DNA of 64,000 nt from Octopus sinensis. Taxonomy: Eukaryota. Under the pieces are notes generated by a model that worked only from the letters and a program-made list of their open reading frames with translations, did no database searches and was not told where the DNA came from. Every line of letters begins with the position of its first letter. The first letter of the stretch is position 1. A program made the translations under genes and the position numbers. The DNA is taken from the NCBI RefSeq assembly GCF_006345805.1, contig NC_043002.1, positions 100,440,001 to 100,504,000 of the forward strand, in the 5' to 3' direction. Below, one piece after another: positions 1-61,849 of the stretch.

Positions 1-466
1 AAGATAAGATAGAACAACAGCAACAGCAAGAACAACAAGATTGTAATGGAAAAGTAGTTAATGCAATTATATTATTATAATATAGTCTGAAAAAGCAGCT
101 GGGACTTCGTTAATAACACAAATAATCCAGTCAAGAGAGAAATATCTTAATGATAACCGTTACTGCTGTCTCTTCATAATATTAAGATATATTCTACCAG
201 AACTAAGTTTTAGCAAACCTTCTATGGAGAACCTAATTACTAATTAATTCTGAATCTTTCTTTAGATATTCGATAAATTAAATTAAAATGCATTGAAAAT
301 TTCAAAAAACAAATTAATTAAATTGAATTGATAATTAATATCTTTTATATCTTTTACTTGCCAGGAAGTATTTTTCACTTATATTTTGTTTTAGCTTTCT
401 TGGAATGTTTACCAATGGATTTTAAATCTCTTTTATCTTTTTACATGTGATGTTTTGTGTGCGAGT

Positions 467-523
<57 letters not shown>

Positions 524-860
524 GCGTGCATGTGTGCGGCGTGCATGTATCCGCATGTGTATACAGGTGTCATAAAAAAGAAAAATGATAAAACTTGAAG
601 CTCTTCGTATAAAGTACCGATATTTATCTGAGGATTTAAAATGATTTTCAAATAGAATAAAATTTTCTTGAGCAAACATGTAACTTTTTTATGTGAATAT
701 AATATAATCGATTATTAAAGTCTTTAATTGCTTTATTTTTTAGAAACTTCTTATACGAATTTTTCTCTCTCTCTCTCTTTCTCTCTCTCTAACACACACA
801 CACAAACATAGATACATACATGCATAAATATACACACACACGTGCATACACACACATATA

Positions 861-891
<31 letters not shown>

Positions 892-1138
892 CAAAGTAAG
901 CAACAAGGATATCCAGAGGTAATGCAGTATGATCGTTTCATGCGACTTTATTTAATTGAACAATGTATTCATTTTATTACATCAATTTAAAATGTAGAGC
1001 AATCTTCAGCTGCACAAAGGCATAGAACTTAATTAAATTAGAAGGACACATTAGTATAATTTTACCTAAAATCTCAAAGAGGATAAGGAGATAGACAAAG
1101 AAAATGTTTTACCAACAACATCATAGTTGTAACTAAGA

Positions 1139-1140
<2 letters not shown>
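892..1140 (-). mobile_element. Probable Penelope-like fragment between (TA)n tracts
   Basis: Unique-looking sequence bounded by (TA)n, with a degenerate hammerhead motif at 922-1015. Confidence 0.35.
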
Positions 1141-1179
<39 letters not shown>

Positions 1180-2151
1180 CCACAAAAATATTAGCAACAG
1201 CACACAAACATGCACTAAACACACATATATAGATGCATAATCGCGTATATTTTATATTACCATGAATAAAGGCTTTTATATATTGCATGAAGTAGTACTT
1301 ATTACAAAAATATAGATTGTGCAACTTATTTCGACAAAGAGTACTGTTAATAGTGACTTCGAATTTTCGCTATCTACGTAGCTTTAAACTCACTGTCAGC
1401 ATTTTCTTTGGAGTGAATGAGTAACCTTTTTCTAAACAGAGCACTCCTTCACGTACAGGTTTAAGGGAAATTCCATTTCCCATCTGGAGACTCACTCTGA
1501 ACTAGCAATTGCGAAATCCGTCTCCACGAAAGACAATCGTACTCTATGAATTTGCTGTATCCATCGACAGGAATAATTAACTATTTTATTGTTGCCATCA
1601 GATGTACACCCTATTAATGAACGTCAAGCCCCTGGCAGCTGACGAACCTGATGTAATATTCTAGTTTTCTTTATCTTACACAGGAGGGCAGAGTAGTTAA
1701 TCCCGGCCACCCATACAGAATATAGTGTAACCATGCTGATCATCCAGCTTCAGTTGCAATCAATTTAGATTCTTCCAACGTACAATGCCTGCAGCAAGTA
1801 GTGAGTTAATAATCTTCTGAACGACCACTGAGCCACTGACTCTCATCAACATTCAAACAGCCTGTGTAGTACCCAAGACAAGGAAATCATGTTACTGAAT
1901 ACATACATACCGCACCACGTGGCCTAAGCTCACCAATAGAGACTTAACATCTAGAAGCCATCTGAAACTTTGCTTAAATTTCTCTCTCTTTTTGTATCTG
2001 ATGAGATGGAGTCGTCCCATGTACCAAGGAAACTTGAAGTCATACAGAGCTGATTCAAGTATTTATCATGCGCGCGTGCGCGCAGGTGTTTGTCTATGTT
2101 GTGTGTGCATGTGTGTATGTATTTGTATTCGTACATGTGTGTGTGCGTATA

Positions 2152-3417
2152 CGAGGGACGTTCAATAAGTAATGCCTCTGACCCACTTGCTGAAATTTTG
2201 CATGTGGAATTATTTATATCTCTATAAAGTAAGTGGTAAATTACAGCTCTGAATTAATTGTGGTTTCTGATTTACAGGTGTTTGAACCGAGTCAAGTGTG
2301 AAATGGAGCCTGTTGAGTGTCGAGCAGTGATCCGGTTTTTGTATTTGAAAGGACGCACACCACGGGAGACTTTTGATGAAATGAAAGTAACTTATGGTGA
2401 TGATGCCCCATCATATGACCTTGTAAAACGCTGGCATCGTGAATTCAAACATTGTCGGAACTCTGTGGAAACACCTCCCATATCTGGTCACCCCCTTCTG
2501 CCATTGATGAGGCATCTGTCCGTCAAGTTGAGGCTGCCATTTTGGAAGATCGACGCATAATTATTCGCCAAATAGCCCATGAGGTCAAGATTAGTACCGG
2601 GTCTGTGGAAACTATCATTCATGACCATTTGCATATGCAAAAAGTGTCTGCCAGATGGATTCCCAGGTTGCTCACGCCTTTCCAGAAGCAAGAACGCGTC
2701 GAGTGCTCGAGGGTGAATTTGGAAATGTGCCAAGAAGATGAGTCAAAATTTTTCAAAAGACTGATTACACAGGATGAAACCTGGGTCCATCACGATGATC
2801 CAGAGACCAAAGCCCAGTCAATGCAGTGGAAGCACCGTGACTCACCCTCTCCAAAGGGTGCAGCCCTCCGCTGGCAAGGTCATGCTCACAGTCTTCTGGG
2901 ACCAGGACGGAGTAGTGATGACAGATTTCCTGGCAAAGGGTACCACAATTGCAGGAGCCTATTATGCTTCCCTTTTGAGGAAATTAAGAGAAGTTATCAA
3001 AATCAAGAGGCGGGGCAAGATCAGCAAAGGCATCCTCCTCCTGCAGGACAACGCTCCGGTCCACAACTCGCGTGTCGCCAGATCAGAAGCACAGGCATAT
3101 GGCTATGAACTCCTCCCCATCCCCCCTACTTTCCTGACCTTGCACCCTCTGATTTTCACCTCTTCCAAATGATGAAGTTGTTTTTGAAAGGAAAGCGTTT
3201 CCCAGATGATGTAGCCTTGATTTCTGAAGTCACGTTGAGGTTGGAGGACCAAGCTGGGTTCTTCTACAAAAACGGTCTCCAGAGCCGCATCAAACGATGG
3301 GAGAAATGCGTAACTCTGGGTGGTTGCTATGTAGAAAAAGACTAATAATTGTGCCAATTTCGTTGCTCTACTGCTATGGGAAGTGGGTCAGAGGCATTAC
3401 TTATTGAACGCCCCTCG
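2152..3417 (+). mobile_element. Full-length (1266 bp) mariner DNA transposon, irritans/Himar1-Hsmar2-like subfamily
   Basis: 37-bp TIRs cgaggg(a/g)cgttcaataagtaatgcctctgacccactt (2152-2188 and 3381-3417, one mismatch); TA target duplications at 2150-2151 and 3418-3419. Confidence 0.97.
2303..3344 (+). pseudogene. Mariner DD34D transposase disrupted by about three frameshifts
   Basis: Pieced from three supplied ORFs plus the C-terminal frame: MEPVECRAVIRFLYLKG..., WIPRLL, ITQDETW, AGKVMLTVFWD, LLQDNAPVH, PYFPDLAPSDFHLF ... RWEKCVTLGGCYVEKD*. There are 34 residues between the second and third Asp. Confidence 0.95.
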
Positions 3418-3774
3418 TATGTGTGTGTGTGTGTGTGTGTAAGTGTGAGTGTGTCGGTGAAGAGTGTGAACAGATCACTGATACTCAAAGAAATTATACA
3501 TATAATAGAACAAGGTGCTTCTGGATATTTGCACTTGATCCCGTCTCAGACATTGTCTAATCACTCTCACTACTCAAAATACGGCGAAGAGATTGGACTT
3601 GAAGAGAGTTCTAACCAACGACGCTCTCCTTCATCAATTGCAATGTAAAATACAGAGTCAGTAGTGAACTCAGAAAGAAGAGCTTTTGGGCCTGAAATAT
3701 GAACATTTTTGTAAGACTTTCCGCACTGTCAGAAGCTTTCATATTTTCCCTCTTCTTTCCCTTCACGTAAATAC

Positions 3775-3845
<71 letters not shown>

Positions 3846-3849
<4 letters not shown>

Positions 3850-4050
3850 ATCCAAACAGAAAACACAAATAAACACAACAACGAGAGGACGTGGAACAAA
3901 TATAGTATTATTGGACGCTCAGGAAAGAAGGGAAGAAGGAGGGTTTAACGTTTCGAGCGGAGTTCTTCGTCGGAAACATAGGAGAAGGAAAGATCCCGAG
4001 AAGGGAAGACAGAGGAAAAAAATCGCCAACGGTACACTCGAGGTCACATT
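3846..4050 (-). mobile_element. Penelope-like terminal repeat fragment carrying a hammerhead motif
   Basis: Reverse-complement homolog of 56775-56982; abuts (TA)n; contains a mutated hammerhead core. The Penelope call is inferred from the ribozyme, since no RT or GIY-YIG sequence is seen. Confidence 0.6.
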
Positions 4051-4067
4051 GATTGATTGATTTCAAA

Positions 4068-4246
4068 TCCTGGCACAATGCCTGCAATATTGAGGGAGGT
4101 AGTTAGTCGATTACATTAACTGGTACTTATTTTATCGAGCCCAAACGGATGAATGGCAAAGTCGAACTTGAACTCAGAACGTAAGACGGACGAAATAACG
4201 TTAAGCATTCTGCCCGACTGCTAACGATTCTGCCGGCTCGCGCCTT
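4068..4246 (-). mobile_element. tRNA-derived SINE family B, diverged
   Basis: Reverse complement of the B head ggcgagccggcagaatcgttagc and body gttctgagttcaag. Confidence 0.8.
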
Positions 4247-4257
4247 TACATACATAC

Positions 4258-4292
<35 letters not shown>

Positions 4293-4864
4293 CAAATCAA
4301 AAATAAAACCAAAAGCTGGGAAAACAACAAAAAGTAAGAATACCGTACACAGTGAATGTATTAGACTGATGCTCAGAGAAAGTTTAAGATGGAATAAAAA
4401 ACGTTGCGTGTGACGTTTCGAGCATGGCTCTTCGTCAGAAAGTTTGGAGAGAAGAAAATGAATAGTCTGAGGAAAGGACGTGTTCCCTTACAGTGTAAAT
4501 TAGAAGACATGTAATAATGCCTCATATCACTCAAAACTAGGTATTAGTCAAAACTACTTATTACTATTCAACATATAAGTAAAAATTAGATATTAGTATT
4601 CGACAAAGTTAAATTTTTTATCAGTAGCATTTTCTTCAAATACTTCTTTTTCACTTTTCCGAGATCAATACAACAACATACCAGGTAAACACTAAGATTC
4701 CATATAATCAATATAATCGTCTGTATCCTTACACCAAGATGGTGACCTAGTGCCTGTGTACAAATAAATTCTTTCTTTATTTGAATATATGTTTCCAATC
4801 TCATAGATTTTTCAATCCACCCCTACCTTGTTTCCCCTCATTTACCCCCCACTCTATGTTTCTT

Positions 4865-4911
<47 letters not shown>

Positions 4912-5355
4912 TTTCTCTTTCTATCCCAGTTTCTTTCCCATTCTCTTCTCTATCTTGCCCGTAACACTTACTTATCGTTTTGTCATTCTTACACTGGTCA
5001 TTTACATAACAGTAAAAATAGTTTGTATGATATGTTTTTCGTGATGTGCTTTAGCATATGTCATTGATATTCAAAACAAATATTCGTCATGTTTTCTGGT
5101 CACACATACAGTTAGTCGAGACACGTGTTGGCTTCCCTGTAAGCATCTCCCATGTTTTCTTAAATATGAACAGATGTTTCCCTTTTCTTTTTTTTTTTTT
5201 TGGTCAGTTGTGAATAATTAGCTACAACGCACACGTTTATTCAATCTTTATTTACTTCGCTGTATGTGTAGTATTGATACTCCACATGCAAACAAAATAA
5301 TACAACCCCTCACACAGGCATGCCTACAGGCACACAAACACACACACATACACGC

Positions 5356-5420
<65 letters not shown>

Positions 5421-6269
5421 GTGTGTGTGTATGTATATTATAATGGAATGATTACTATGAAGCATTCTGTAGAATATATTGTATAAAAGATTGTAGGTAA
5501 GGCCCAAAAAATGCGAAGTAAATGCAAGGTAAATCACAAGAACACAGACATGTGAATTAATTTTGACTTACATTGCCTTCAATATTTCTGGGTTATGACC
5601 CCATTTCCTGGAGGTCATATATTTGTTTTCTTGTGATTTACTCTGCATGTTCTCTCCCTGCTCGCCGCGTTCTCACGTCACTCCTACAATGACACAAGTG
5701 CTAAGTTGCATCGACCTTCGTTACCAACCTTCGTTCTGAATGAGCATCAGCGGCGGGGAGTTGACAGAAATGCAGGAGAAGGAAACTGCCACACCTCTTC
5801 AAATAATATTGTTAGGGGTTATTCGAGGAAATGTAAAAATACAAGTATGTGCAAATATATACTCAACCTTGAGGGCTTGAGTTCCTATATATTCAGCATT
5901 ACAATCTTTCAGCAGAGAACGTAAATGAATAACGGGTTCAGCTCTACTGGAAGTCTTTACACAATGCTCCATATATTATTATTATTGACCCCACCAGATT
6001 TTATGATATGGCGATTATCTTTGTGTTTATTGGAATATTTTCTGGTGGAAATTAAATCTGTTTTCATGTTCTTAATAATTGGTACATGTTTACGTAATGG
6101 ATGCTTATATCTGTAGGGCTGATTATTCAGAATAACATTAGTCTGAAAAGAACTTTAATTTTTAACCTCTTTCGTTTTTGAATTGTTTGAGGAGACATTT
6201 TTCTGTGTGTGTGGGTGGGAGGGTAGCATTTTTCAGACCCTCTCTGTGGAGAATTGTTTCAAATTTTAG

Positions 6270-6468
6270 AATAATGCCATTAATTTCGGGAGAAGAAAGT
6301 ACGTGGAGTACATCAACCCCAGTATTCAACTGGCACTTATTTTATCGATCTCGAGAGGACAGAAGGCAAAGTCAGCCTCGGCGGAATTTGAACTCAGAAC
6401 GCAAAATGGACGAAATGCTGCTAAACATCTTATCCGGCATGCTAACGATTCTGGCAGCTCGCTGCCTT
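6270..6468 (-). mobile_element. SINE family B
   Basis: ggcggaatttgaactcagaacg and ctggcagctcgctgcctt blocks. Confidence 0.85.
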
Positions 6469-8351
6469 TTTCTCTGTTGACATTAAGGAGAGTTGTTTAC
6501 TCGCAGAACATAATATACTTATAGATTGTCTTCAACCATATATTTACGATGTATGATAATCTCTATAACGATAAGATTCATTAATTACCTTGACATAAAA
6601 CTAGACGTGAGCACAGACAAACAATACCTCTCCCAAAAAGTAAGAAAATGAAACAGTATATATGGATAGATGCTCTAACCGCCATCTCACAACCATAGCA
6701 ACATTTGAAGCTAAGTATATGAAGAATAATATCAAAACTTTCACCAAACAGAATATATTTCCAAAAACCTCCCATTGCAAAGCTATATTACCAAGAAGCG
6801 GCTACAATGAAAATTGAAATAAATGAAACGCCCCATGAACCAAAAATAAAAGCGAAAGGAAAGAAATCGTGTGATACAATCCACCAGACTATATGACAGT
6901 AGCTGCGAATCCACAAATCTTCCTGTCTTGAAGCGAGCTCTACTACACATAACTGCTACGAAATTTAATAACAAAACACATGAAGACGAGATGCAGTTGC
7001 TCAAATGATATAGACTTCCTTTCCATTGAATTGTATATTTTATAATTACCATTCTATAGCATATTTTTCTGCATCGTATATTCAGTCACTTCGTTTCTGC
7101 TGCACTAAGTAATCCAAGCAAAAATGTGTGTATGGCAACATTCCATGTTCAGTTCAATGGCTTGCATTCTACTTTACGCTTTTGTACATCCAGTTTTTAA
7201 AGACCGTATAACTTCTCTAGTTTCATCTTTCTATATTCTCTCATATAAAGGAGACACGTGGTCTGAGAGATAACAATTACAACGCTTCTTCTGTCGATAT
7301 GGCTATAATGCTGTATTTGAAATATCAATGTTTCACTGAATTAAGAGTTTATCCGTTTATAAACTATCTGTTTAATAATGCCTGCGGTGTAAAACCGGGA
7401 AGTTTAAAAACCATCACATTTCACAGGGGTGGTGTTAATGGCGCACTCACTTTGACAAGCATCTGGATAAGGCCCCAATTCCGAGGATAACTTTCGCCTT
7501 TTCTTCCGGCAATTATGTAGATTCTGAACACGGTCGTAGTCTCTATACTTTCCTCGTTTAATCCAGATAAACAAAAATAAAACTTTAGAATATCGTTTTC
7601 TGTGTGGATGATTTCCATTTATGGTTTCCGTTGATTGATTGTAAAATGCATTGAAATCCGCCAGTTTCAATGTACGTTAGTAACAAGTCGGTGAGCAGAA
7701 ACAAAATCAATACTATTTCACTTTCATCACATAAATTGTGTCTACTGATACTGGATTAGCTATATTAACACAAAATATCGAGTAATTTACGACGTATATG
7801 AATTAAACCACGTTTCTTGATGGTCAAAGAGATTTATAATTCTTCATCCGAGGTGCTGATATGAATCTTCTGATACGAATCTTCTAACGGATTCTATTCT
7901 TTATACCCAGCTCATAATGTTTCATGAATTACTCACAACACCGTGGTATGTTTATGCGAACGACCTTGCTTTGCTTCTCGTGCATTTTTGTTCGTAGCTT
8001 TTCAATAAGCTTAAATATTCCTACTTAATTCCTGGATCTCTGGAACATTCTTATGTAACTCTATTATGCAATCGATTTCAATAGGTACAATATTTCTTGC
8101 ATGATTGTGTTACCAGAGTCGACGCATTACAGGCTTTTAGCTTAGGTTCGGACTGAAAAAATATTATGCGGAGAATTTGATAGACGAAAACTGTACGGAG
8201 GCACTTATGTATATGTGTACAAGTGTGTGGTTGTGTATGTGTGTGTATGTGTGTGTATGTATGGTGTTTGTGTGTGTTTTATAGAGGAAGAGAGCTTCAA
8301 TATATGATGCTGCAGAGTTTCTCGTTTATCTAAATAAAAATGTTTTTCTTA

Positions 8352-8600
8352 AGGTGCATGATCTTGTGGTTAGGGTGTTACTCTCGCTATCACCAGATCA
8401 GGAATTCGAGTCCGGGACCAGCCGGTGTATTGTGTTCTTGAGTAAAACACACCATTTCATGTTGCTGCAGCACAGTACTGTGTCGGGACTGTCGCGTGTC
8501 GCAAAAGACGTTGAGACAGGATTTGCAATGCAGCCTCGGTAAACCCTCTCCAAGAACGACTACTCCAAAGGGGACTCATGAGAGTTTTCGTCTGAGCGGT
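8352..8600 (+). mobile_element. SINE family C, old copy
   Basis: attcgagtccgggacc...tgtgttcttgagtaaaacac...ttcatgttgctgcag. Confidence 0.65.
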
Positions 8601-9228
8601 GCAAAGGCATCATCTACCAAGAGTAATACAGAATCTCAAGGAAACTGTGGTAGCAGCGATGCGTTATTATAGCGCATGTCACCATACTGCTGCCACTTTT
8701 TTTCTCAAAAGGTTATCATCAGTTGATCGCTGGATCTAACATTTGACTCAGCAGAAAATATTTTTCAGTTCAGACGTGAATGACTGTATGTGTGCCATGT
8801 GTGCGCACGCGTGTGTAGGTTATGTATGTACCTGTTAATGAAGTTTAAGTCATTAAACATTGATATACCGAAACTATCATTCGAGCATGCTAAGCCCTAG
8901 CTGGCCTGTGCACTATCGCAGGATATATAGACTCTGCCACCACCCGATGTGAGATTATTGCCTACTGAATGTACCAGGTCATGACGCAGCCAACCAAACT
9001 GATATGTAATCTGTCACTACCAAACCAATAGTCTATCCAACAAGTAACTGCGGTCCCTGAAATTTTTACGGTTGATTTATGCAAACATGCTATCTGCTCT
9101 ATTGCATGGACATGTAATGAAAGAACGATTGCAGCTTGCTTGCTCAAGCACCAACGTAATCTAACCTGATTAACGGATACCTAAATACTTTCTCGTAGAA
9201 GCTATTTTCGAGTTCCTCCTAATTTCTC

Positions 9229-9302
<74 letters not shown>

Positions 9303-9748
9303 GCTGGCGGTGTTGATGTGTTCTGAACCCAGGAAGTTCAACTAACTTTTAACCAATAAATTTTTATTTGATATATCGTTATGCACAATAATATATAATA
9401 GTCACAAATAGTTTACATATTATTATCTTATTTTTTATTTAATCATTACATATCGTTTAGGCATTTTTTCAGCACAAGGTCACATTTTATTGAGCTAACA
9501 CATGTTCAAAGACGTTGCAACTATGAGCAATCCATCTTTATTGAGTCATAGCGATGCATATCATTTCTGTTTTAGGTATATCTTGCTGATGTTTTTCTAC
9601 AAACGCCCGAGATTTCGTCTGGATTCTTTTACTTGAAATGGATTCTTCATAATATATTGAAACAAACTATATCGTTAATTTACTATGTACTCTAACAGCT
9701 GCTAAAATTAGACAATGAAAAGATATATATTATTATTAAGTGGTTTTA

Positions 9749-9960
9749 AGGAGGCGATCTGACAGAATCGTTAGCTCGTCGGGCAAAATACTAAGCGACA
9801 TTTTGTCGGACTTTATGTCCTGAATTCAAATTCCCCCGACGTCAATTTTTTCTTTTATCCTTTTGGATCAAATGAGTACCATTTGAGCACCGCGGCCGAT
9901 GTGATCGATTTAACCACTTCCCCGAAAGTGTTGGACTTGTGCCGAAGGTTTTAAGCCATT
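9749..9960 (+). mobile_element. SINE family B, diverged
   Basis: aaggaggcgatctgacagaatcgttagc...ctgaattcaaattccc. Confidence 0.75.
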
Positions 9961-11013
9961 ATCAAATTGTCTTGAGAGCAATGGATAGTAAGAATCATAA
10001 AAATGTTGAAGCTAAATGCATTTAGAGTCGCGATCTTCGGCAACCAACTTGTCTTTCACCTTGCAGGAACGATATAATATAGTATTTATCGAGTACTGGG
10101 TTGGATTTAATGCTTTCACTCTGTTCCATCACATCTTAAACCCTGTGCATTATGCTAGAATAAGTTCATTTTTTCCTTATACCTACATCAGAAATTATTA
10201 TTACCAAGTGGCTTTACGTCACTATTAGAAATCATTGTTTTTAACGCAGCTTCGTCAGCATAAACATTTGTTTATATACTTGCTCTGATATATAAATTTG
10301 AATTCAAATCCCGGTGACAGTGAATTTACATTTCACGAATCAAAATGTATGATCTGTGTTACGGAAGTTAGTGTGAATGTTAGAGTACTACGCGAAATAA
10401 AGTGATCTTAAGTTTAAGTTCAAATCCTATCCAGATTGAGTATGTTTTATATTCCCCGAGGGCTGGTAAAATAAGCATTCTCAGATGTAGAAGGCGAATA
10501 AATCGATTACCCTATTTTTCCATAATTAGTACCATCATTTCAAAGTCAGAGAACATGTTATAAATATTAACTGGCAGAATCATTTGCACGTTCAGTAAAA
10601 TGATTAGTGGCGGCATTTTGCCCGTCTTTATGTTCTGAATTCAAATTCATCATCAACATCATTATCATTATCGTATGAGTAAGCCCCTATTTCATGCCCC
10701 GGCGTCATAGAAAACATCACTCAGTTTATATTTCTAATAAAACACTTGTTTGCGGGGTCGATCTTGCTAGGTTCTGCAGGCCTGCAAAGGCTGTGGAAAA
10801 AAGGATCCAAGGACGGGACCGTCATAGTTAGATTGTTCTTAATCATAGTTCCACTCCATCACAACTAACCTGAACAGAAGCAAAATCGACTACAATATCA
10901 TCATCATCATTATCTTATCATCATCATCATCATCTTTCTTACTAAGCGCTTTTAAAATGCCAGCATTAGCATATATATATATATATATATATACATACAT
11001 AAACACACACACA

Positions 11014-11131
<118 letters not shown>

Positions 11132-11474
11132 TATATATACTGTAACATCTGAAAAACAAAAACATGTCACCAAATACCTACAAAAATAATAAAAGTACAA
11201 ATAATTACAGCTGTCGCAAGGAAACTGTTTCTCCGCTCAGGAAGCAATGCATACAAAAAAAAACACATCATATACAAATGCACAATTGCCCCATCACAAC
11301 TTAAATACGTATGCATAGGACCCTTCGAAAACCAATTTAAAGTCCGTTATCTCAACCATGTATCCCCGTTCTGAAGATAAGCAGCCGACATGCAACATCA
11401 CGAGCAGACCTTAGATTAAAAGGAAAAATAAAATATGAAATACAATGGTCAAAAATATATTACTCCTCCGTTCC

Positions 11475-11848
11475 AGACTGGTCAACAGAAGAGGCCCAGT
11501 CATTCTTCATGATAAAGCTCGATCACACATTTCACTAATGACGCTCCACAAGTTAAAGGAATTTCGCTACGAAGTTCTTCCCCACCCAACTTATTCTCTA
11601 GACCTTTCACCTGGCAGCTACCACTTTTCAAGCAACTCCATGGTTTCCTGCTAGAGAAGGAAATAACAAATCAAACCGATGCTGAAGGTGCGTCCAAAGA
11701 TTCATCAGGTTCAGAACTCCAGACTTTTAGGTTACAAACTCGTGTTGATTGTAATGGTACCTACTTTGAGGAATAAAATTTCCGTATTGTTGAAATATAT
11801 TGGGATAAAGTTTGTTTCAAAACGTTGCTTACAATTTACTCAGCCTGA
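11475..11848 (+). mobile_element. Decayed 3' fragment of a mariner, cecropia/Hsmar1-like
   Basis: RLVNRRGPVILHDKARSH...LHKLKEFRYEVLPHPTYSLDLSPGSYHF, a ...VDCNGTYF* remnant, and a degenerate right TIR ending cagcctga-TA. Confidence 0.85.
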
Positions 11849-11932
11849 TATTACTACTGGATAGCACAGGGTAAATTTGAAGGTAAACGAGCTTTATACT
11901 GTACTCTTTTACGTTCTTAATAGAACCTAACT

Positions 11933-11966
<34 letters not shown>

Positions 11967-11995
11967 ATATATATATGTAGGTGCTTATATATATA

Positions 11996-12035
<40 letters not shown>

Positions 12036-12037
<2 letters not shown>

Positions 12038-12406
12038 GAATAAATGAAAGAATGGAGTCGAACGAAGATTTTAACAAAATTCATTTACTCTCAACACAGT
12101 CTTGAGGCTGATAGAGGTTCCTTGTCTTTCCTGATGAGAAGACGGCATAATGCACCCTTTAGTTTTTCGGAATTGAGAGTATGCAGTCTTCGAAACATGT
12201 GTTGAGAGTAAAGGAATTTTGTTAAAATCTTCGTTCGACTCCATTCTTTCATTTATTCATATTTAAAAAAAAAACACACAAATTTCCACACAAGAACACG
12301 GGGTTTCTGCCCTTGGCATGTAGCTTCAACCGTGTTTTCTGACGTGAATTTGCTACCCAGGTATCGATTAACCGAATTATCCATACTAGAATAATTCATT
12401 CACCTA

Positions 12407-12410
<4 letters not shown>
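12036..12410 (+). mobile_element. Penelope-like fragment with an inverted terminal duplication, between (TA)n tracts
   Basis: ~63-bp inverted arms (12036-12098 and 12198-12260) and a hammerhead core; (TA)n on both sides. Confidence 0.55.
12126..12208 (+). ncRNA. Type-I hammerhead ribozyme motif
   Basis: Stem I CTTTC/GAGAG; core CTGATGA (12131-12137); stem II GAAGAC.GCATA/TATGC.GTCTTC; GAAA (12192-12195); short stem III AC-ATGT-GT; predicted cleavage after GUU at 12203. Confidence 0.65.
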
Positions 12411-12451
<41 letters not shown>

Positions 12452-12670
12452 TTAAAACTGTAAATCGAGTCCGAAAAGGCACAAAAGTATATTTTAGAGA
12501 ATGTTTAATATTTTTGTTACATTCAGTGATTTAAGATATAACTGGTTTCCATGTATCCATCTTATCAAAGATTAATAAGAAATTTGGGCTAAGTTAAAAG
12601 AAAAAAAATTAGTCTCGTAACAGTTTGTACCTATGTCTTAGTGCATAGTGTCATATATATATATATATTA

Positions 12671-12716
<46 letters not shown>

Positions 12717-12746
12717 TATATATATTGTATGTATATATATATATAT

Positions 12747-12791
<45 letters not shown>

Positions 12792-12926
12792 ACGTACCTA
12801 TGTATGTATGCATGCATGTATGTATGTATATATGTGGAGGTCGAGTCCGTCTCCTGCTACTCAGAGTTTTGCATGTGAATGCACAGAATCTTCGCGCAAG
12901 TTATATCTGAATATATAATCAATCTC

Positions 12927-13128
12927 AGGGCGGCGTCAGCACGCCGGGCGAAGTGTGTGGCCGTACTTCGTCTGCCGTTACGTTCTGAGTTCCAATCCGT
13001 CGATGTCGACTTTGCCTTTCATCCATTCGGGGTCGATAAATTAAATACCAGTTGCGTACTGATGTGGATCTAATCGACTGGACCCTCCCCAAAAATTTCG
13101 GGCCTTATGCCTAGAGAAGACAAGAATC
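12927..13128 (+). mobile_element. SINE family B (tail type 1), 165 nt upstream of the exon 13293 acceptor
   Basis: gcacgccgggcgaa...gttctgagttccaatcc...gtcgactttgcctttcatcc...atttcgggccttatgcctagag. Confidence 0.9.
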
Positions 13129-13292
13129 TATTCAACGATATTGACTACTCTCTTTTCCAACAATCAGCTCTCTTTTCCAACTGGTTACATACATTTATAA
13201 AGCTGTGTATGTGTACGCATTTTTATAGAATTATGCGTTTATATGTTTTTTTGATATAATGTTTATAACTATATTTATTTACTTCATTCTAG

Positions 13293-13417
13293 GAAGAATC
13301 GCTGATAGAATCCTTCAACTTATTCATAGACTACTGCTTAAACCTCATTCGCAAACAAAGGGATGTTTTCATTCCAAGTCAAAAGGATGCAATGCATTCC
13401 CTAGAATGTATGCTAAG
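13293..13417 (+). CDS. BAIAP3: Internal coding exon (125 nt, phase 0 to phase 2) of a BAIAP3/Munc13-4-like (Unc13 family) protein, MUN region
   Basis: Acceptor atttatttacttcattctAG|GAAG and donor AAG|GTATGT. Open frame EESLIESFNLFIDYCLNLIRKQRDVFIPSQKDAMHSLECML(R). Matches my recalled human BAIAP3 stretch EESLADSLSAFSEFGLQLLRQLRDYFPATNSTAVHRLELLLK; not BLAST-verified. Confidence 0.85.
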
Positions 13418-13744
13418 GTATGTCAACACCAATTTATTTTATTTTTACGATTTTAAATAATATAACTCTGTTATTTGCACTTTAAATATTATACACTTGT
13501 GTTTGCATTTACAATTTTCCTTTTAATGTTTGTAACATTAAAATAATTTAACATTTGTTTATCTAGTGTCAAGCAAATGTGTAAGTTTTGTGAGACTGAA
13601 AATCTTTTTTTTTTAATTATGTTTATTGACGAATAACCTGGGATTAAACTATGAATACTGATTGACATTTAAACAATGGGAAATATGAAGATATGGGGAG
13701 GTCTTTGAAAGAGATATTGAAGATACCTGGCCTAGGCGTTAAAT

Positions 13745-13960
13745 TAATGCCATGCGCTCACAATCGCAAGATCGTAGTTTCGAATCCCAGACTGGGCCGG
13801 GTGCTGTGCTCTTGAGCAAAACGCTTCGTTTCATATAGTTCCAGTCCACTGAGCTGTAAATGAGTAAGTCTGCGACGGATTGACATCTTATTCAGTGGAA
13901 ACGTGGTGACCGAATAACCGTCTCTATGAATCGAAGGACTCGAGACAATAATGCCCATGA
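13745..13960 (+). mobile_element. SINE family C, diverged
   Basis: gtttcgaatcccagac...gtgctcttgagcaaaacgctt...cagtccactgagctgtaaatgagt. Confidence 0.7.
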
Positions 13961-36065: not shown

Positions 36066-36783
36066 TCCAGCATAGCCACAGTCGCATTGCTGAAACTAAT
36101 AAAAGAGTATACATGCATATGAATCTACCCCAGTACTTAATTTTGCTAAGCCTAGTACTTATTCCATTGATCACTTTATATATATGTATATGAGGCTAGA
36201 GAGAAAGAAAATATACATTTCTGTATGCGTAGCTGGAGACACATACACAGACTTATGTGCGTGTGTGTATTTATTTATTTATTTATTGATCTATTTAGTT
36301 ATGTATTTATACACGCACATACAAAACAACTTCGATATGTTTTCCTTTCCCGCTGAGTAATGTCTACCACAAATAATTATAAACATCAAGGAAGCATTGA
36401 TGTAGCAAAGACATACTACAAACGCTAATGCACAGATTTATCTTTTTGTTCGGTAATTAGGTTTCTCTTTCAAGTCTATGTTTCCGGATCCTTCTGGGTA
36501 TTGAGTTTGCTTATAACTCCTTAAGTGTCGTTAGCATAGAACAAAGAATGTATTGGAATCGAATCAAGCCACAGTGACGAACTATATTCCACTGCTCTCC
36601 GGTAATAGTTTAGATTAACCAGTTACCCTCCTGGGTCGAGAATATTGTACAGATGTATGGTAGAAAACCATGAAGTACTTGAGGTTTTTATCTTTGTTTT
36701 GTCCACCAAATTTACTTTGCTCTTAATAACTTCAGAATAAAAATCTAATAATTTTATTTCCTTCTGTTTCGATCTTTTCACAG

Positions 36784-36874
36784 ATGTCTCTCAAAAATAT
36801 ATGGCATGACAGCTTTCAAAGAGCTGTGTCCATTTGCCAAGGAATTACATTCGCAGATTGTGACAGCCATAAAG
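36784..36874 (+). CDS. BAIAP3: Next internal coding exon (91 nt, phase 2 to phase 0) of the same BAIAP3/Munc13-4-like gene
   Basis: Branch-like CTAAT at 36745, AG-free polypyrimidine tract, ttcacAG|A acceptor, AAG|GTAACA donor. Joined to 13417 it reads R-CLSKIYGMTAFKELCPFAKELHSQIVTAIK, matching recalled BAIAP3 CLGKLQLFQPSFEICPFESELNMDIAAALK (CL.K...CPF..EL...I..A.K). Confidence 0.85.
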
Positions 36875-38059
36875 GTAACATTGAATTTATATTTTATTAT
36901 TTTCTCAACGACTATATTTAGAGATGTTTTTTGTTAAATTTGTCCTAGTTTCAGTGAAAAAAATGTTCTCCAGCTACACTGAATTAATACTATTTGCACT
37001 GCAAAATCAAGTTAGTATCCAAATTATGCTTAACCATCTACCGTCGAGTAAAGTTGCTTATATGCCATTGGTTTGATATTCTTCTGACAGTGTTGGTTCG
37101 GTGACAGACTAATGCCCAGCATTTATTACATTAGTAAAGTTGTCTTCAAATTATGTCGGGTTTAACTTCGCCTTTCATCCTTCCTACGTCGTAGTGTCCA
37201 TCAGATAAGTTCTTGAACTTGATTCGATTTCACAACATGTGTGGGCTTTGTGATTAAGATAGAAATCATTATCACGGAAAATTCTAATACTTTATCTGAC
37301 TAAAGTGCCAAACTAAATATCTAGCTAAATACGTTTAGCCTCTTCTTTATGATTTCAAATCCTGCTTGTTGACAGATGCCTGAAAGCCAAGAATAAGTAC
37401 ATATCAGAACGCGACTTCTAATCAGTTTGGATTGCCAGTTGTAATCAAATCAGTTTATTTATTATCCTTGAGGAAAGACATAAAAACGTTACGCAAGTAC
37501 AACATCGATTTTTCAGAACCTCTGGTTCCAAAGCCAATCCAGATAAACTGATTTTTTTTTTCCGAACCAGAGGTGATCACATTCGAAATTAAACAAATAT
37601 TGAATTTACTCAATTAAATGAAATTCAGATACTTGTACATTAGCATACATGATTACAAGTTTATTAATATTGTACTGTGCTAGATACTGGTCCGTGAAAA
37701 ATACCAGTAAACTACGCTGTCAGCTGCAGGAACATGAATTTCCTGTTCATAAATTTGTTCGGATTAGAAGGGTCCCGGACTATCAATATCAGGAAAGGTG
37801 GTATTGTACTTATACTAAATTTGTTATCCTAAGAGTGCGCCTTTTTTCGCACGTGAAAGAAATCAAATATTAGCAAAGTCAAATCTGTATCTAATACCCA
37901 AATTTTGCTTTTTTTTATTTTTTACCGGTCGATAAAGTAAACATCAGAAATATGTCTACTTCTAATCACTCGCTTCAAATTTTCAATAAGAATCAATGAC
38001 TACTAATTTACTTTTGCTAAATTGAATGTTCTTAAACCCGAATAAATAATCGGCTCTTA

Positions 38060-53819: not shown

Positions 53820-54344
53820 TTGGGTTGTCCGGAAAGTTCGTGCCGATTGATAGTAGCTTGCATTTCGACTTATTTTAGAACATGGTTGAGTTCATAAAAT
53901 AGGATTTGACTGCACATCCATTTAGAGAACAGTTTAAGCTATCTTTTCATGGAAGAAGGTTTATGTTTCTATAACCTATGTTAATTCTGTAACCCTTTAA
54001 AATGGAAGATAAGAAAGTTCATTTTCGTCACTTGATGCTTTGGGAACCAGACAAAAATTGCTGCAGCTCGGCTGGGATGTGTTACCCCACCCTCCCATAT
54101 TCACCAAATATTGCTCCGTCGGATTTCCACTTATTCAGGTCTCTGCAGAATAATCTTAATGGTAAAAATTTCAATTCTTTGGATGACGTAAAAAAGATAC
54201 CTTGAGGACTTCTTTGCCATGAAACCGCCTCAATTCTGGGAAGAGGGTATTTTCAAGTTAAAGGAAAGATGGAGACGCATTGTGCAACAAAATGGTTCAT
54301 ATTTGGTTCTTTAAAAATCTGCACGAACTTTCCGGACAACACAA
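53820..54344 (+). mobile_element. Internally deleted mariner (mellifera-like), 525 bp, both TIRs retained
   Basis: TIRs ttgggttgtccggaaagttcgtgc and gcacgaactttccggacaacacaa with TA flanks. The N-terminal MEDKKVHFRHLMLWE is fused close to PYSPNIAPSDFHLFRSLQNNLNGKNF. Confidence 0.92.
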
Positions 54345-54607: not shown

Positions 54608-55010
54608 GAGTGGCTGTGTGGTAAGTATCTTGCTAACCAACCACATGGTTCCGGGTTCAGTCCCACTGCGTGGCATCTTGGGCAAGTGTCTTCTGCTATA
54701 GCCCCGGGCCGACCAATGCCTTGTGAGTCGATTTGGTAGACGGAAACTGAAAGAAGCCTGTCGGTATATATGTATATTTATAAGTGTGTGTGTATATGTT
54801 TTTGTGTCTGTGTTTGTCCCCCTAGCATTGCTTGACAACCGATGCTGGTGTGTTTACGTCCCCGTCACTTAGCGGTTCGGCAAAACAGACCGATAGAATA
54901 AGTTCTGGGCTTACAAAGAATAAGTCCCGGGGTCGATTTGCTCGACTAAAGGCGGTGCTCCAGCATGGCCGTAGTCAAATGACTGAAACAAGTAAAAGAG
55001 TAAAAGAGTA
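54608..55010 (+). mobile_element. SINE family A, near full length
   Basis: Colinear with 49162-49610; 3' tail (gtaaaaga)n. Confidence 0.92.
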
Positions 55011-61101: not shown

Positions 61102-61849
61102 AAATGGTGCCTCATGAGTTGTTCGAAAGCAACCGCAAATCCCGAGTTGACATCTACGCTTCTCTCTATTCTCGCGAACTCATTTCACCCTTTTCGGATA
61201 AGCTTGCGACTAGTAACGAAAGATGGATCTTCTATCGAAATGTTAAACGTCGTAAACAGTGGCCTGGTAAAAGAGAAAAGGCTCAACCACAACCGAGAAG
61301 GGAACTTCATGGGGAAAATATTCTTCTCTCTCTCTCTCTGGTGGGATTGCAAAGGAGTAATTCACTCTGAATTGTTACCACCTAATGCAACAATCAATGC
61401 TCAAGTCTACTATCAGCAATTAGAGCGTTTGAACCAAGTTTTGAAGAAAGAAAACAAGCCCGATTTAGTGAATCGAAAAGGAGTGATGTTTCTTCAGGAC
61501 AATGCGCGACACCACACTTCAAAGATCACATCACAGAAGATCGAAGAGCTTAATTGGGAAAAAAATCCTCATCCACCTTATTCTCCCGACCTTGCTCCTT
61601 CGTAGTTTACAGAATCATTTGGGGGACATAACGTTCGTAAGCCAGGAGGCGGTTGAAAATGACATTTCAGAGTTCTTCGCTTTGAAACCAAAAGAGTTTT
61701 ACAGTGATGGGATTAAAAAGTTTGTACATAGATGGAAGGAAGTCATAGATAATCAAGGAAAGTACATTTGACGATTAAATTTCAATTAAATATAACATTT
61801 GATCACTTGTTTTCTTTATTCAAAATTCGGACAGAACTTATGGGATGAC

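What the first reader, a model, noticed from the sequence alone, without database searches (positions are those of the whole stretch)
12126..12208. Intact hammerhead ribozyme motif on the pre-mRNA strand, 1.1 kb upstream of a BAIAP3-like exon
Seen: a complete type-I hammerhead with a canonical CUGAUGA/GAAA core, 5-bp stem I, 6+5-bp stem II with a long loop, and a GUU cleavage triplet (cut after 12203). Stem III is only 2 bp as a monomer, but ACAUGUGU can pair fully with a second copy using two G-U wobbles. Established: Penelope-like retroelements carry minimal hammerheads, many of which cleave as dimers. Inference: it sits in sense orientation in an intron of a vesicle-secretion gene, so it could cut the nascent pre-mRNA and influence splicing or output.
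Basis: partly seen in the sequence, partly recalled or inferred. Interest (0 to 1): 0.7.

Follow-up and report, generated by a model that had tools for sequence, protein, structure and literature searches.

The report
Hammerhead-like motif inside a foldback insertion
A sequence matching the hammerhead ribozyme consensus really is there, but it sits inside a young hairpin-forming mobile-element-like insertion in an intron, so it is most likely transposon baggage that cannot fold or cut in the gene's pre-mRNA.

Summary
The motif is real. It has CUGAUGA at 12131-12137, a 6+5-bp helix II, GAAA at 12192-12195, a 2-bp/tetraloop helix III, GUU with the cut after 12203, and a stem I that extends to 13 bp. 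Decoy-core and random controls give about 1e-4 to 8e-3 chance hits per window. The gene context also holds: the motif is intronic and sense in a C2-MUN-C2 (Munc13-4/BAIAP3-type) gene.

- The motif lies inside a 225-bp foldback with 63-nt arms that are 62/63 complementary. The cleavage site and the 3' strand of stem I lie in the right arm. Arm-arm pairing beats the hammerhead fold by 12-22 kcal/mol.
- No Rfam hammerhead model matches, even at E<=10 on 126 nt.
- The window holds one copy only, so there is no dimer partner. The 8-bp helix III duplex is only -6 kcal/mol.

The layout resembles a heavily 5'-truncated Penelope-like insertion: head-to-head inverted copy, (TA)n target, and a one-sided 39-nt A/C-rich extension. 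A chance motif in a MITE-like foldback is not excluded. No related copy could be retrieved, so core conservation and covariation remain untested.

Verdict: an ordinary transposon-borne hammerhead-type motif. A regulatory role in the pre-mRNA is not supported.

The parts
11935..12034 (.). (TA)n microsatellite that directly abuts the left end of the insertion; the likely target
   Evidence: TRF, period 2, 50 copies. The window holds 104 (TA)>=6 tracts covering 3.7%, so direct abutment by chance is about 0.5%.
12036..12098 (.). Left arm of the foldback. It is the reverse complement of the right arm. On the Penelope-like reading it is an inverted, 5'-truncated copy of the element's last 63 nt.
   Evidence: the repeat finder I1. 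Exact comparison gives 62/63 complementary, with the single mismatch at 12083 A versus 12213 G.
12099..12197 (+). Unique central region. It holds the stem I 5' strand, the CUGAUGA core, helix II, GAAA and the start of helix III.
12116..12130 (+). Stem I 5' strand: 5 bp next to the core, a 2x2 internal loop, then 8 more pairs
   Evidence: pair list; constrained fold
12131..12137 (+). Hammerhead core C3-A9 (CUGAUGA)
12138..12191 (+). Helix II: a 6-bp stem with G10.1-C11.1, a G.A mismatch, a 5-bp stem and a roughly 30-nt partly paired cap. It is far longer than in curated hammerheads.
12192..12195 (+). Core G12 A13 A14 and A15.1 (GAAA)
12195..12202 (+). Helix III: A-U and C-G pairs with an AUGU tetraloop. 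The segment is quasi-palindromic (ACAUGUGU).
   Evidence: A 2-bp stem with a tetraloop is the usual invertebrate form (PMC7229834).
12203..12204 (+). Predicted scissile bond: U17 then G1.1, with GUU as the cleavage triplet
   Evidence: Cleavage itself was not tested.
12204..12218 (+). Stem I 3' strand. It lies entirely inside the right arm, so the left arm competes for it.
12198..12260 (.). Right arm of the foldback
12261..12299 (+). A10 plus an A/C-rich 39-nt stretch (82% A+C), present on the right side only. It is a candidate Penelope-type 'tail' or retroposition tail.
   Evidence: Compared with the 30-40-bp one-sided tail in PMC8557442 and the AC-rich reverse-transcription start site in PMC11167929. 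The assignment is an inference.
13293..13418 (+). Internal coding exon of a Munc13-4/BAIAP3-type gene, with an AG acceptor and a GT donor
   Evidence: 62% identity to P0001 residues 227-268 and 52% to P0005 residues 452-493. P0005 has C2+MUN+C2 domains. Splice sites.
36782..36922 (+). Next exon of the same gene
   Evidence: tblastn continues at P0005 residues 493-540 and P0003 residues 50-95

Best explanation
The hammerhead-consensus sequence at 12116-12218 belongs to a small, young foldback insertion (12036-12260, plus a possible 39-nt A/C-rich extension to 12299). The insertion landed next to a (TA)n tract in an intron of a Munc13-4/BAIAP3-type gene.

The most likely origin is a heavily 5'-truncated insertion of a Penelope-like retroelement, or of a non-autonomous element mobilised by one. 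On this reading a 162-nt sense copy carries the element's own type-I hammerhead. A 63-nt inverted copy of its 3' end is joined to it head to head.

In the host pre-mRNA the two arms zip into a 63-bp near-perfect duplex. That duplex takes up the cleavage site and the 3' strand of stem I, so the ribozyme fold is essentially never populated. The 2-bp helix III has no second copy to dimerise with. The element is therefore removed with the intron as an inert hairpin, or at most acts as a double-stranded RNA. It is not a regulator of the gene.

Shown: the motif, the foldback, the gene context, the energetic competition, the single copy and the Rfam negatives. Inferred: the retroelement origin and the lack of cleavage.
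For: - Motif and pairings verified. They are improbable by chance per window.
- Foldback: 63-nt arms, 62/63 complementary. The full-element fold is -117.9 kcal/mol with z = -16, and it pairs the cleavage site with the left arm.
- The hammerhead-constrained ensemble is 12-13 kcal/mol worse once the transcript reaches 12215, and 22 kcal/mol worse for the whole element. The corresponding fractions are 5e-10 and 2e-16.
- Only one copy of the element and of the motif occurs in 64 kb, and there is no tandem array. The helix III duplex is only -6 kcal/mol.
- Penelope-like signature from the literature: an inverted 5'-truncated copy adjacent to the unit, a 30-40-bp tail often at one end only, a (TA)n preference and a hammerhead in the pseudo-LTR (PMC8557442).
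- In the green anole element, reverse transcription starts in an AC-rich stem-loop 85-92 nt beyond the hammerhead cut site (PMC11167929). Here the cut site is 57 nt from the arm end and 96 nt from the end of the A/C-rich stretch.
- A 2-bp/tetraloop helix III is typical of invertebrate type-I hammerheads (PMC7229834). G10.1-C11.1 and a palindromic helix III are hallmarks cited in PMC4209133.
- Cephalopod genomes carry Penelope elements and Rfam-detectable hammerheads (PMC6962438).
Against: - No reverse transcriptase or GIY-YIG endonuclease coding remnant lies nearby.
- No relative of the element could be retrieved, so it is not shown to be a repeat family at all.
- No Rfam hammerhead model matches, even at E<=10 on 126 nt.
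- Helix II (54 nt) and the lack of a bulged base after A9 differ from the minimal hammerheads described in Penelope-like elements.
- The window is rich in mariner-type DNA transposon remnants, which fits a MITE reading of the inverted repeat.
- The right flank does not return directly to (TA)n.
- Nearest-neighbour energies ignore tertiary contacts and co-transcriptional kinetics, so 'no cleavage' is a prediction and not a measurement.
Confidence: 0.5

Rival explanations
1. The inverted repeat is a MITE-like or foldback DNA transposon, or a local inverted duplication at a fragile (TA)n tract. On this reading the hammerhead match is fortuitous: a low-information consensus plus stems supplied by the element's own short internal repeats. 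It never was a ribozyme.
For: - Long, near-perfect terminal inverted repeats, small size, AT-richness and insertion at TA-rich DNA.
- Four mariner-type transposase remnants in the window show that DNA transposons are common here.
- No Rfam hammerhead match.
- A 42-nt insertion in helix II is atypical.
- Internal repeats partly explain the stems: TTGAGAGTA occurs twice and GTCTT three times.
- The relaxed descriptor yields about 7e-3 chance hits per window, which is hundreds per Gb-sized genome.
Against: - The full combination is far rarer than chance. It comprises a perfect 11-nt core, G10.1-C11.1, C15.2-G16.2, a 6+5-bp helix II and a 13-bp stem I. There were 0 such hits in 15,120 random window-equivalents and 0 of 2,519 decoys.
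- There is no clear target-site duplication at the arm ends.
- The ends are unrelated to the inverted repeats of the mariner copy in the window.
- The one-sided A/C-rich extension is not a MITE feature.
Confidence: 0.3
2. One reading: an active intronic hammerhead that cuts the nascent pre-mRNA, as a monomer or a dimer, and thereby tunes splicing or output of the secretion gene.
For: - Intact core in sense orientation in an intron, 1.1 kb upstream of an exon.
- The isolated 96-nt RNA adopts stems I and II in its centroid structure.
- The single arm mismatch (12083 A / 12213 G) happens to favour stem I pairing, C12121-G12213, over arm pairing.
- There are precedents for intronic self-cleaving ribozymes whose cleavage competes with splicing, such as the CPEB3 ribozyme (PMC10919898).
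Against: - The competing arm is transcribed before the ribozyme and out-competes stem I by 12-22 kcal/mol.
- The isolated fold is not unusually stable, z = -1.2.
- Helix III is 2 bp and H17 is U. There are no recognisable loop-loop contacts.
- No second copy is present for dimerisation, and the dimer helix is only -6 kcal/mol.
- The young arms (62/63) mean no evidence of selection.
- No conservation data are obtainable.
- Penelope-type hammerheads cleave poorly in vitro even as dimers (PMC4209133).
Confidence: 0.07
3. The functional unit, if there is one, is the 63-bp hairpin and not the hammerhead. It would be an intronic double-stranded RNA that is edited by ADAR or processed into small RNAs.
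For: A 63-bp duplex with one mismatch; -117.9 kcal/mol, z = -16. It sits in sense orientation in a gene of a neuronal and secretory type. That long intronic hairpins are typical substrates for such enzymes is general knowledge and was not tested here.
Against: There is no expression, editing or small-RNA data. No Rfam miRNA or other family matches the element; the sub-threshold miRNA hits nearby are (TA)n artefacts. No conservation is testable. Any young inverted repeat would look like this.
Confidence: 0.08

Closest known systems
Hammerheads in the pseudo-LTRs of Penelope-like retroelements (Cervera & de la Pena 2014, PMC4209133; Craig et al. 2021, PMC8557442)
   Same: Type-I topology, a short stem I next to the core, a long helix II stem (6 bp), G10.1-C11.1 and a short quasi-palindromic helix III that could extend in a dimer. 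The host locus shows an inverted 5'-truncated copy, a (TA)n/AT-rich target and a one-sided extension of about 39 nt.
   Different: No reverse transcriptase or endonuclease remnant and no tandem partner. No unpaired base between A9 and G10.1. Helix II carries a 42-nt insertion. Family membership could not be tested because no other copy was available.
Canonical invertebrate type-I hammerheads of non-LTR retrozymes (Cervera & de la Pena 2020, PMC7229834; Rfam RF00163)
   Same: The same core and the same 2-bp plus tetraloop helix III. Low-GC small element. A highly self-paired RNA in which the ribozyme strands can be sequestered.
   Different: Not in a tandem array. Stem I and helix II lack the 6-bp/4-bp geometry and the loop-loop contacts. 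The Rfam model does not match. The flanks are inverted repeats, not direct repeats.
Intronic self-cleaving ribozymes of vertebrates (hammerheads HH9/HH10; the CPEB3 HDV-like ribozyme, PMC10919898)
   Same: Sense orientation in an intron of a protein-coding gene.
   Different: Those ribozymes are deeply conserved at orthologous positions and fold autonomously. This one is a young, single, transposon-like insertion whose fold is out-competed by its own arms. The Rfam HH9/HH10 models do not match.
MITE / foldback DNA transposons
   Same: About 225 bp, AT-rich, long near-perfect terminal inverted repeats, intronic, at TA-rich DNA, in a genome with many mariner remnants.
   Different: No clear target-site duplication. 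The ends are unrelated to the mariner inverted repeats seen in the window. Multi-copy status is unknown.

Membership tests
Hammerhead ribozyme (type I) | Invariant core C3 U4 G5 A6 N7 G8 A9 / G12 A13 A14, an A15.1-U16.1 pair, and H17 not G | tested here: met
   CUGAUGA 12131-37, GAAA 12192-95, A12195-U12202, U17 at 12203
Hammerhead ribozyme (type I) | Three helices around the core, with helices II and III capped and stem I open | tested here: met
   Stem I is 5 bp (13 with the extension), helix II is 6+5 bp, and helix III is 2 bp with a tetraloop. Helix III is marginal.
Hammerhead ribozyme (type I) | Recognition by the curated covariance models (Rfam Hammerhead_1, _3, _II, HH9, HH10) | tested here: not met
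   No hammerhead hit at gathering score on the window, at E<=10 on 1 kb, or at E<=10 on 126 nt. The 42-nt insertion in helix II is the likely cause, but that could not be tested.
Hammerhead ribozyme (type I) | The catalytic fold is accessible in the natural transcript | tested here: not met
   The hammerhead-compatible fraction is 0.6% in the isolated 96 nt, 5e-10 with the left arm present, and 2e-16 in the whole element. This is an equilibrium model only.
Hammerhead ribozyme (type I) | Stem I / helix II tertiary contacts that allow activity at physiological Mg2+ | not testable with these tools
   No recognisable canonical loop 1 or loop 2. A 2x2 internal loop in stem I and a G.A mismatch in helix II are the only candidates.
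Hammerhead ribozyme (type I) | Site-specific self-cleavage | not testable with these tools
   Needs an in vitro transcription assay or end mapping.
Hammerhead ribozyme (type I) | Core conservation and stem covariation across copies or orthologues | not testable with these tools
   No other copy in the window. None retrievable from the protein or DNA collections.
Penelope-like element insertion | Reverse transcriptase / GIY-YIG endonuclease ORF | tested here: not met
   No such ORF in the ORF lists. Ten flanking ORF pieces gave no Pfam hit. A short 5'-truncated copy would not be expected to retain the ORF.
Penelope-like element insertion | An inverted 5'-truncated copy adjacent to the unit, forming inverted repeats | tested here: met
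   A 63-nt inverted copy of the outer end, joined head to head. Feature as described in PMC8557442.
Penelope-like element insertion | AT-rich or (TA)n target | tested here: met
   The left end abuts a 100-bp (TA)n tract; chance is about 0.5%.
Penelope-like element insertion | A 30-40-bp tail, often at one end only | tested here: inconclusive
   A 39-nt A10 plus A/C-rich stretch on the right only. Without other copies its assignment to the element is a guess.
Penelope-like element insertion | Minimal-hammerhead traits: an unpaired base after A9 and a 7-8-bp helix II with a short loop | tested here: not met
   No bulge after A9. Helix II is 6+5 bp with a long cap (compared).
Non-LTR retrozyme | Tandem head-to-tail repeats of 170-400 bp, each with a hammerhead | tested here: not met
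   A single motif and a single element. TRF finds only microsatellites.
MITE | Terminal inverted repeats flanked by a target-site duplication; many copies | tested here: inconclusive
   Inverted repeats are present. No clear duplication at 12033-35 / 12261-63. Copy number is unknown.

The most novel reading that the evidence does not exclude
The foldback represents an undescribed family of hammerhead-bearing non-autonomous elements in this mollusc-type genome. In such a family the arm duplex and an extended 13-bp stem I would form a built-in conformational switch, as in viroid-like RNAs. The copy in this intron would then self-cleave co-transcriptionally often enough to lower output of a vesicle-priming gene.
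Probability: 0.06. Interest if true: 0.6.

Novelty: new member of a known kind. Interest (0 to 1): 0.2.

Why it matters
If the motif were active, it would be an invertebrate example of a transposon-delivered ribozyme interfering with a neuronal secretion gene. It would also be a natural hammerhead gated by a competing hairpin. As the evidence stands it matters mainly as a caution. A perfect hammerhead consensus in an intron is not evidence of regulation when it sits in a young inverted-repeat insertion that sequesters its own cleavage site. It also gives a concrete locus for testing whether cephalopod-type genomes carry hammerheads of the Penelope type that Rfam models miss.

Tried and rejected
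- Rfam at three stringencies gave no hammerhead family. The only hits near the site are (TA)n-driven miRNA-model artefacts.
- I looked for other copies by translating the element's 53-aa ORF and searching the protein collection. Nothing was found.
- Exact-pattern scans of metagenome and viral contigs returned only four chance 19-25-nt matches with unrelated flanks.
- blastn of the element against the window found no second copy.
- The word-index protein search with the exon found nothing. The profile-free representative search did find homologues and fixed the gene and strand.
- No upstream exon could be placed in 1-13292. The best candidate, 7112-7204, has E = 0.14.
- I used a mariner transposase to try to reach contigs of the same species. 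The closest hits are 1.5-kb Logan contigs without useful flanks.
- I tested whether the foldback is a deletion derivative of that mariner. Its ends are unrelated.
- The tRNA-derived SINE idea, prompted by a B-box-like GTTCGACTCC in the arm, was dropped because ARAGORN finds nothing.
- The retrozyme tandem-array idea was rejected.
- No hammerhead motif occurs on the minus strand.

Full report
**Observation**

- Stem I: cuuuc 12126-30 pairs with gagag 12204-08, with one G-U.
- Core: CUGAUGA at 12131-37.
- Helix II: GAAGAC 12138-43 pairs with GUCUUC 12186-91 (G10.1-C11.1). After a G.A mismatch comes a 5-bp GCAUA/UAUGC helix with a roughly 30-nt cap.
- GAAA at 12192-95.
- Helix III: A12195-U12202 and C12196-G12201, with an AUGU loop.
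- U17 is 12203, so the predicted cut is after 12203.
After a 2x2 internal loop it continues for eight more pairs, 12116-23 with 12211-18.
- ACAUGUGU can self-pair over 8 bp with two G-U pairs at -6.0 kcal/mol. An out-of-register 6-bp ACAUGU palindrome is equally stable.

**Chance**

- In 40 Mb of first-order Markov sequence the strict descriptor (I>=5, II>=6, III>=2) never hit, and I>=4/II>=4 hit once.
- As a control that keeps the real sequence, I replaced the two core strings by all 2,519 other same-composition permutations. This gave 0 strict, 2 intermediate and 18 relaxed hits.
- In 15,120 random window-equivalents the rates were 7.8e-3 (relaxed) and 1.3e-4 (strict) per window. None had an extended stem I of 13 bp or more.

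The motif is therefore well beyond chance for one window. The bare descriptor would still give a few to hundreds of chance hits in a Gb-sized genome. This element also contains short internal repeats (TTGAGAGTA twice, GTCTT three times) that make random models too generous.

The motif sits inside an inverted repeat. The arms are 12036-12098 and 12198-12260 and are 62/63 complementary, with a 99-nt unique centre.
- The right arm contains three of the four helix III loop bases, G16.2, U16.1, U17, and the whole 3' strand of stem I.
- The whole element folds to -117.9 kcal/mol (z = -16). In that fold the cleavage site is paired with the left arm and the CUGAUGA core is partly paired as well.
- The isolated 96-nt RNA does adopt stems I and II in its centroid structure, but it is not unusually stable (z = -1.2).
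- Constrained folding gives the hammerhead-compatible share of the ensemble: 0.6% for the isolated RNA, 5e-10 once the transcript, left arm included, reaches 12215, and 2e-16 for the whole element.
- The competing arm is transcribed before the ribozyme. This is the reverse of the order that lets viroid-like hammerheads cut co-transcriptionally.

**Family tests**

- No Rfam hammerhead model (types I, II, III, HH9, HH10) matches at gathering score, at E<=10 on 1 kb, or at E<=10 on just 126 nt. The 42-nt insertion in helix II is the probable reason, but I could not test that.
- The window holds one copy of the element and one copy of the motif and no tandem array. The dimer route therefore has no partner in cis.
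- A -6 kcal/mol intermolecular helix implies a dissociation constant of tens of micromolar. That is not plausible for a single-copy pre-mRNA.

**Gene context**

- The exon at 13293-13418 has an AG acceptor and a GT donor. It found six homologues in the representative library.
- One homologue, P0005, has C2, MUN and C2 domains. That is the Munc13-4/BAIAP3 architecture.
- The exon aligns to its residues 452-493, and the next exon is at 36782-36922 on the same strand.
I could not place the upstream exon within the window.

**Origin**

The left end abuts a 100-bp (TA)n tract. With 104 such tracts in the window, direct abutment by chance is about 0.5%. To the right of the right arm, and only there, lies a 39-nt A10 plus A/C-rich stretch (82% A+C).

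The literature describes Penelope-like insertions as follows:
- They are highly 5'-truncated.
- They often have an inverted 5'-truncated copy immediately adjacent, which forms inverted repeats.
- They carry a 30-40-bp tail, often at one end only.
- Some clades prefer (TA)n targets.
- They carry hammerheads in the pseudo-LTR (PMC8557442).

In the green anole element, reverse transcription starts in an AC-rich stem-loop 111-118 bp into the ORF, and the hammerhead cut site is 26 bp into the ORF. That places the start about 85-92 nt beyond the cut (PMC11167929). Here the cut site is 57 nt from the arm end and 96 nt from the end of the A/C-rich stretch.

Other consistent features:
- Invertebrate type-I hammerheads typically have a 2-bp helix III with a tetraloop (PMC7229834).
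- G10.1-C11.1 and a palindromic helix III are cited hallmarks (PMC4209133).
- Cephalopod genomes contain Penelope elements, and 235 Rfam hammerhead hits were reported in the giant squid (PMC6962438).

These coincidences make a retroelement-borne hammerhead the best single reading.

Points against that reading:
- No reverse transcriptase or endonuclease remnant is nearby.
- The helix II geometry and the absence of a bulge after A9 differ from the described minimal hammerheads.
- The window has four mariner-type transposase remnants, which fits a MITE reading.

**Consequences**

The arms differ at one of 63 positions, so the insertion is young. An intact core says nothing about selection. The one mismatch (12083 A / 12213 G) happens to favour stem I pairing over arm pairing, but that is a single observation.

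I conclude that the sequence is a hammerhead-type motif carried by a foldback insertion and that it is not expected to cut the pre-mRNA. The regulatory inference is unsupported. No cleavage was measured, so this remains a prediction. It would be overturned by ends at 12203/12204 in vivo or by efficient cleavage of the full-length transcript in vitro.

**Limits**

No DNA from the same or a closely related genome was reachable. Copy number, core conservation, stem covariation and the orthologous site are all untested. The source organism looks octopod-like to me from its interspersed repeats, but that rests on memory alone.

Noticed in passing
window 2303-3342 (+), 11448-11627 (+), 54046-54305 (+), 61191-61768 (+): Four mariner-type transposase remnants. 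The first is a frameshifted, near full-length copy. It is 92% identical in DNA to a 1.6-kb Logan contig and 89% identical in protein to an intact 350-aa transposase. The last has a Pfam Transposase_1 hit.
   Followed up: partly
window, whole: The window is extremely rich in microsatellites. It has 104 (TA)n tracts of at least 6 units (3.7% of bases), and 8% of bases lie in repeats of 1-4-nt units. Sub-threshold Rfam 'miRNA' hits at 11922-11998 and 12394-12458 are artefacts of these tracts.
   Followed up: yes
window 11934-11983 and 12401-12450: There is a second, outer inverted repeat: (TA)n plus GTAGGTG on the left and CACCTAC plus (TA)n on the right, 94% complementary over 50 nt. It brackets the foldback and 140 bp of unique sequence. 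It may mark the true insertion boundaries or may simply reflect the TA tracts.
   Followed up: no
window 12100-12208: The element contains short internal repeats. TTGAGAGTA occurs at 12172-80 and 12200-08. GTCTT occurs at 12100 and 12186, with its complement GAAGAC at 12138. These allow alternative pairings of the helix II and stem I strands.
   Followed up: partly
window 12083 / 12213: The only mismatch between the two 63-nt arms (A versus G) weakens arm-arm pairing exactly where G12213 can pair with C12121 in the extended hammerhead stem I.
   Followed up: no
window 13293-13418: The exon's translation shares no three 5-residue words with any protein in the 90%-clustered collection. The best representative is only 62% identical. 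The species' own orthologue, or this exon of it, therefore seems to be absent from that collection.
   Followed up: partly
window 12930-13110, 13700-13900, 54826-55008 and elsewhere: Interspersed SINE-like repeats recur across the window, for example stretches translating as ...KAVLQHGRSQMTETSKRVKE. From memory they resemble abundant octopod repeats. This was not tested against any database.
   Followed up: no
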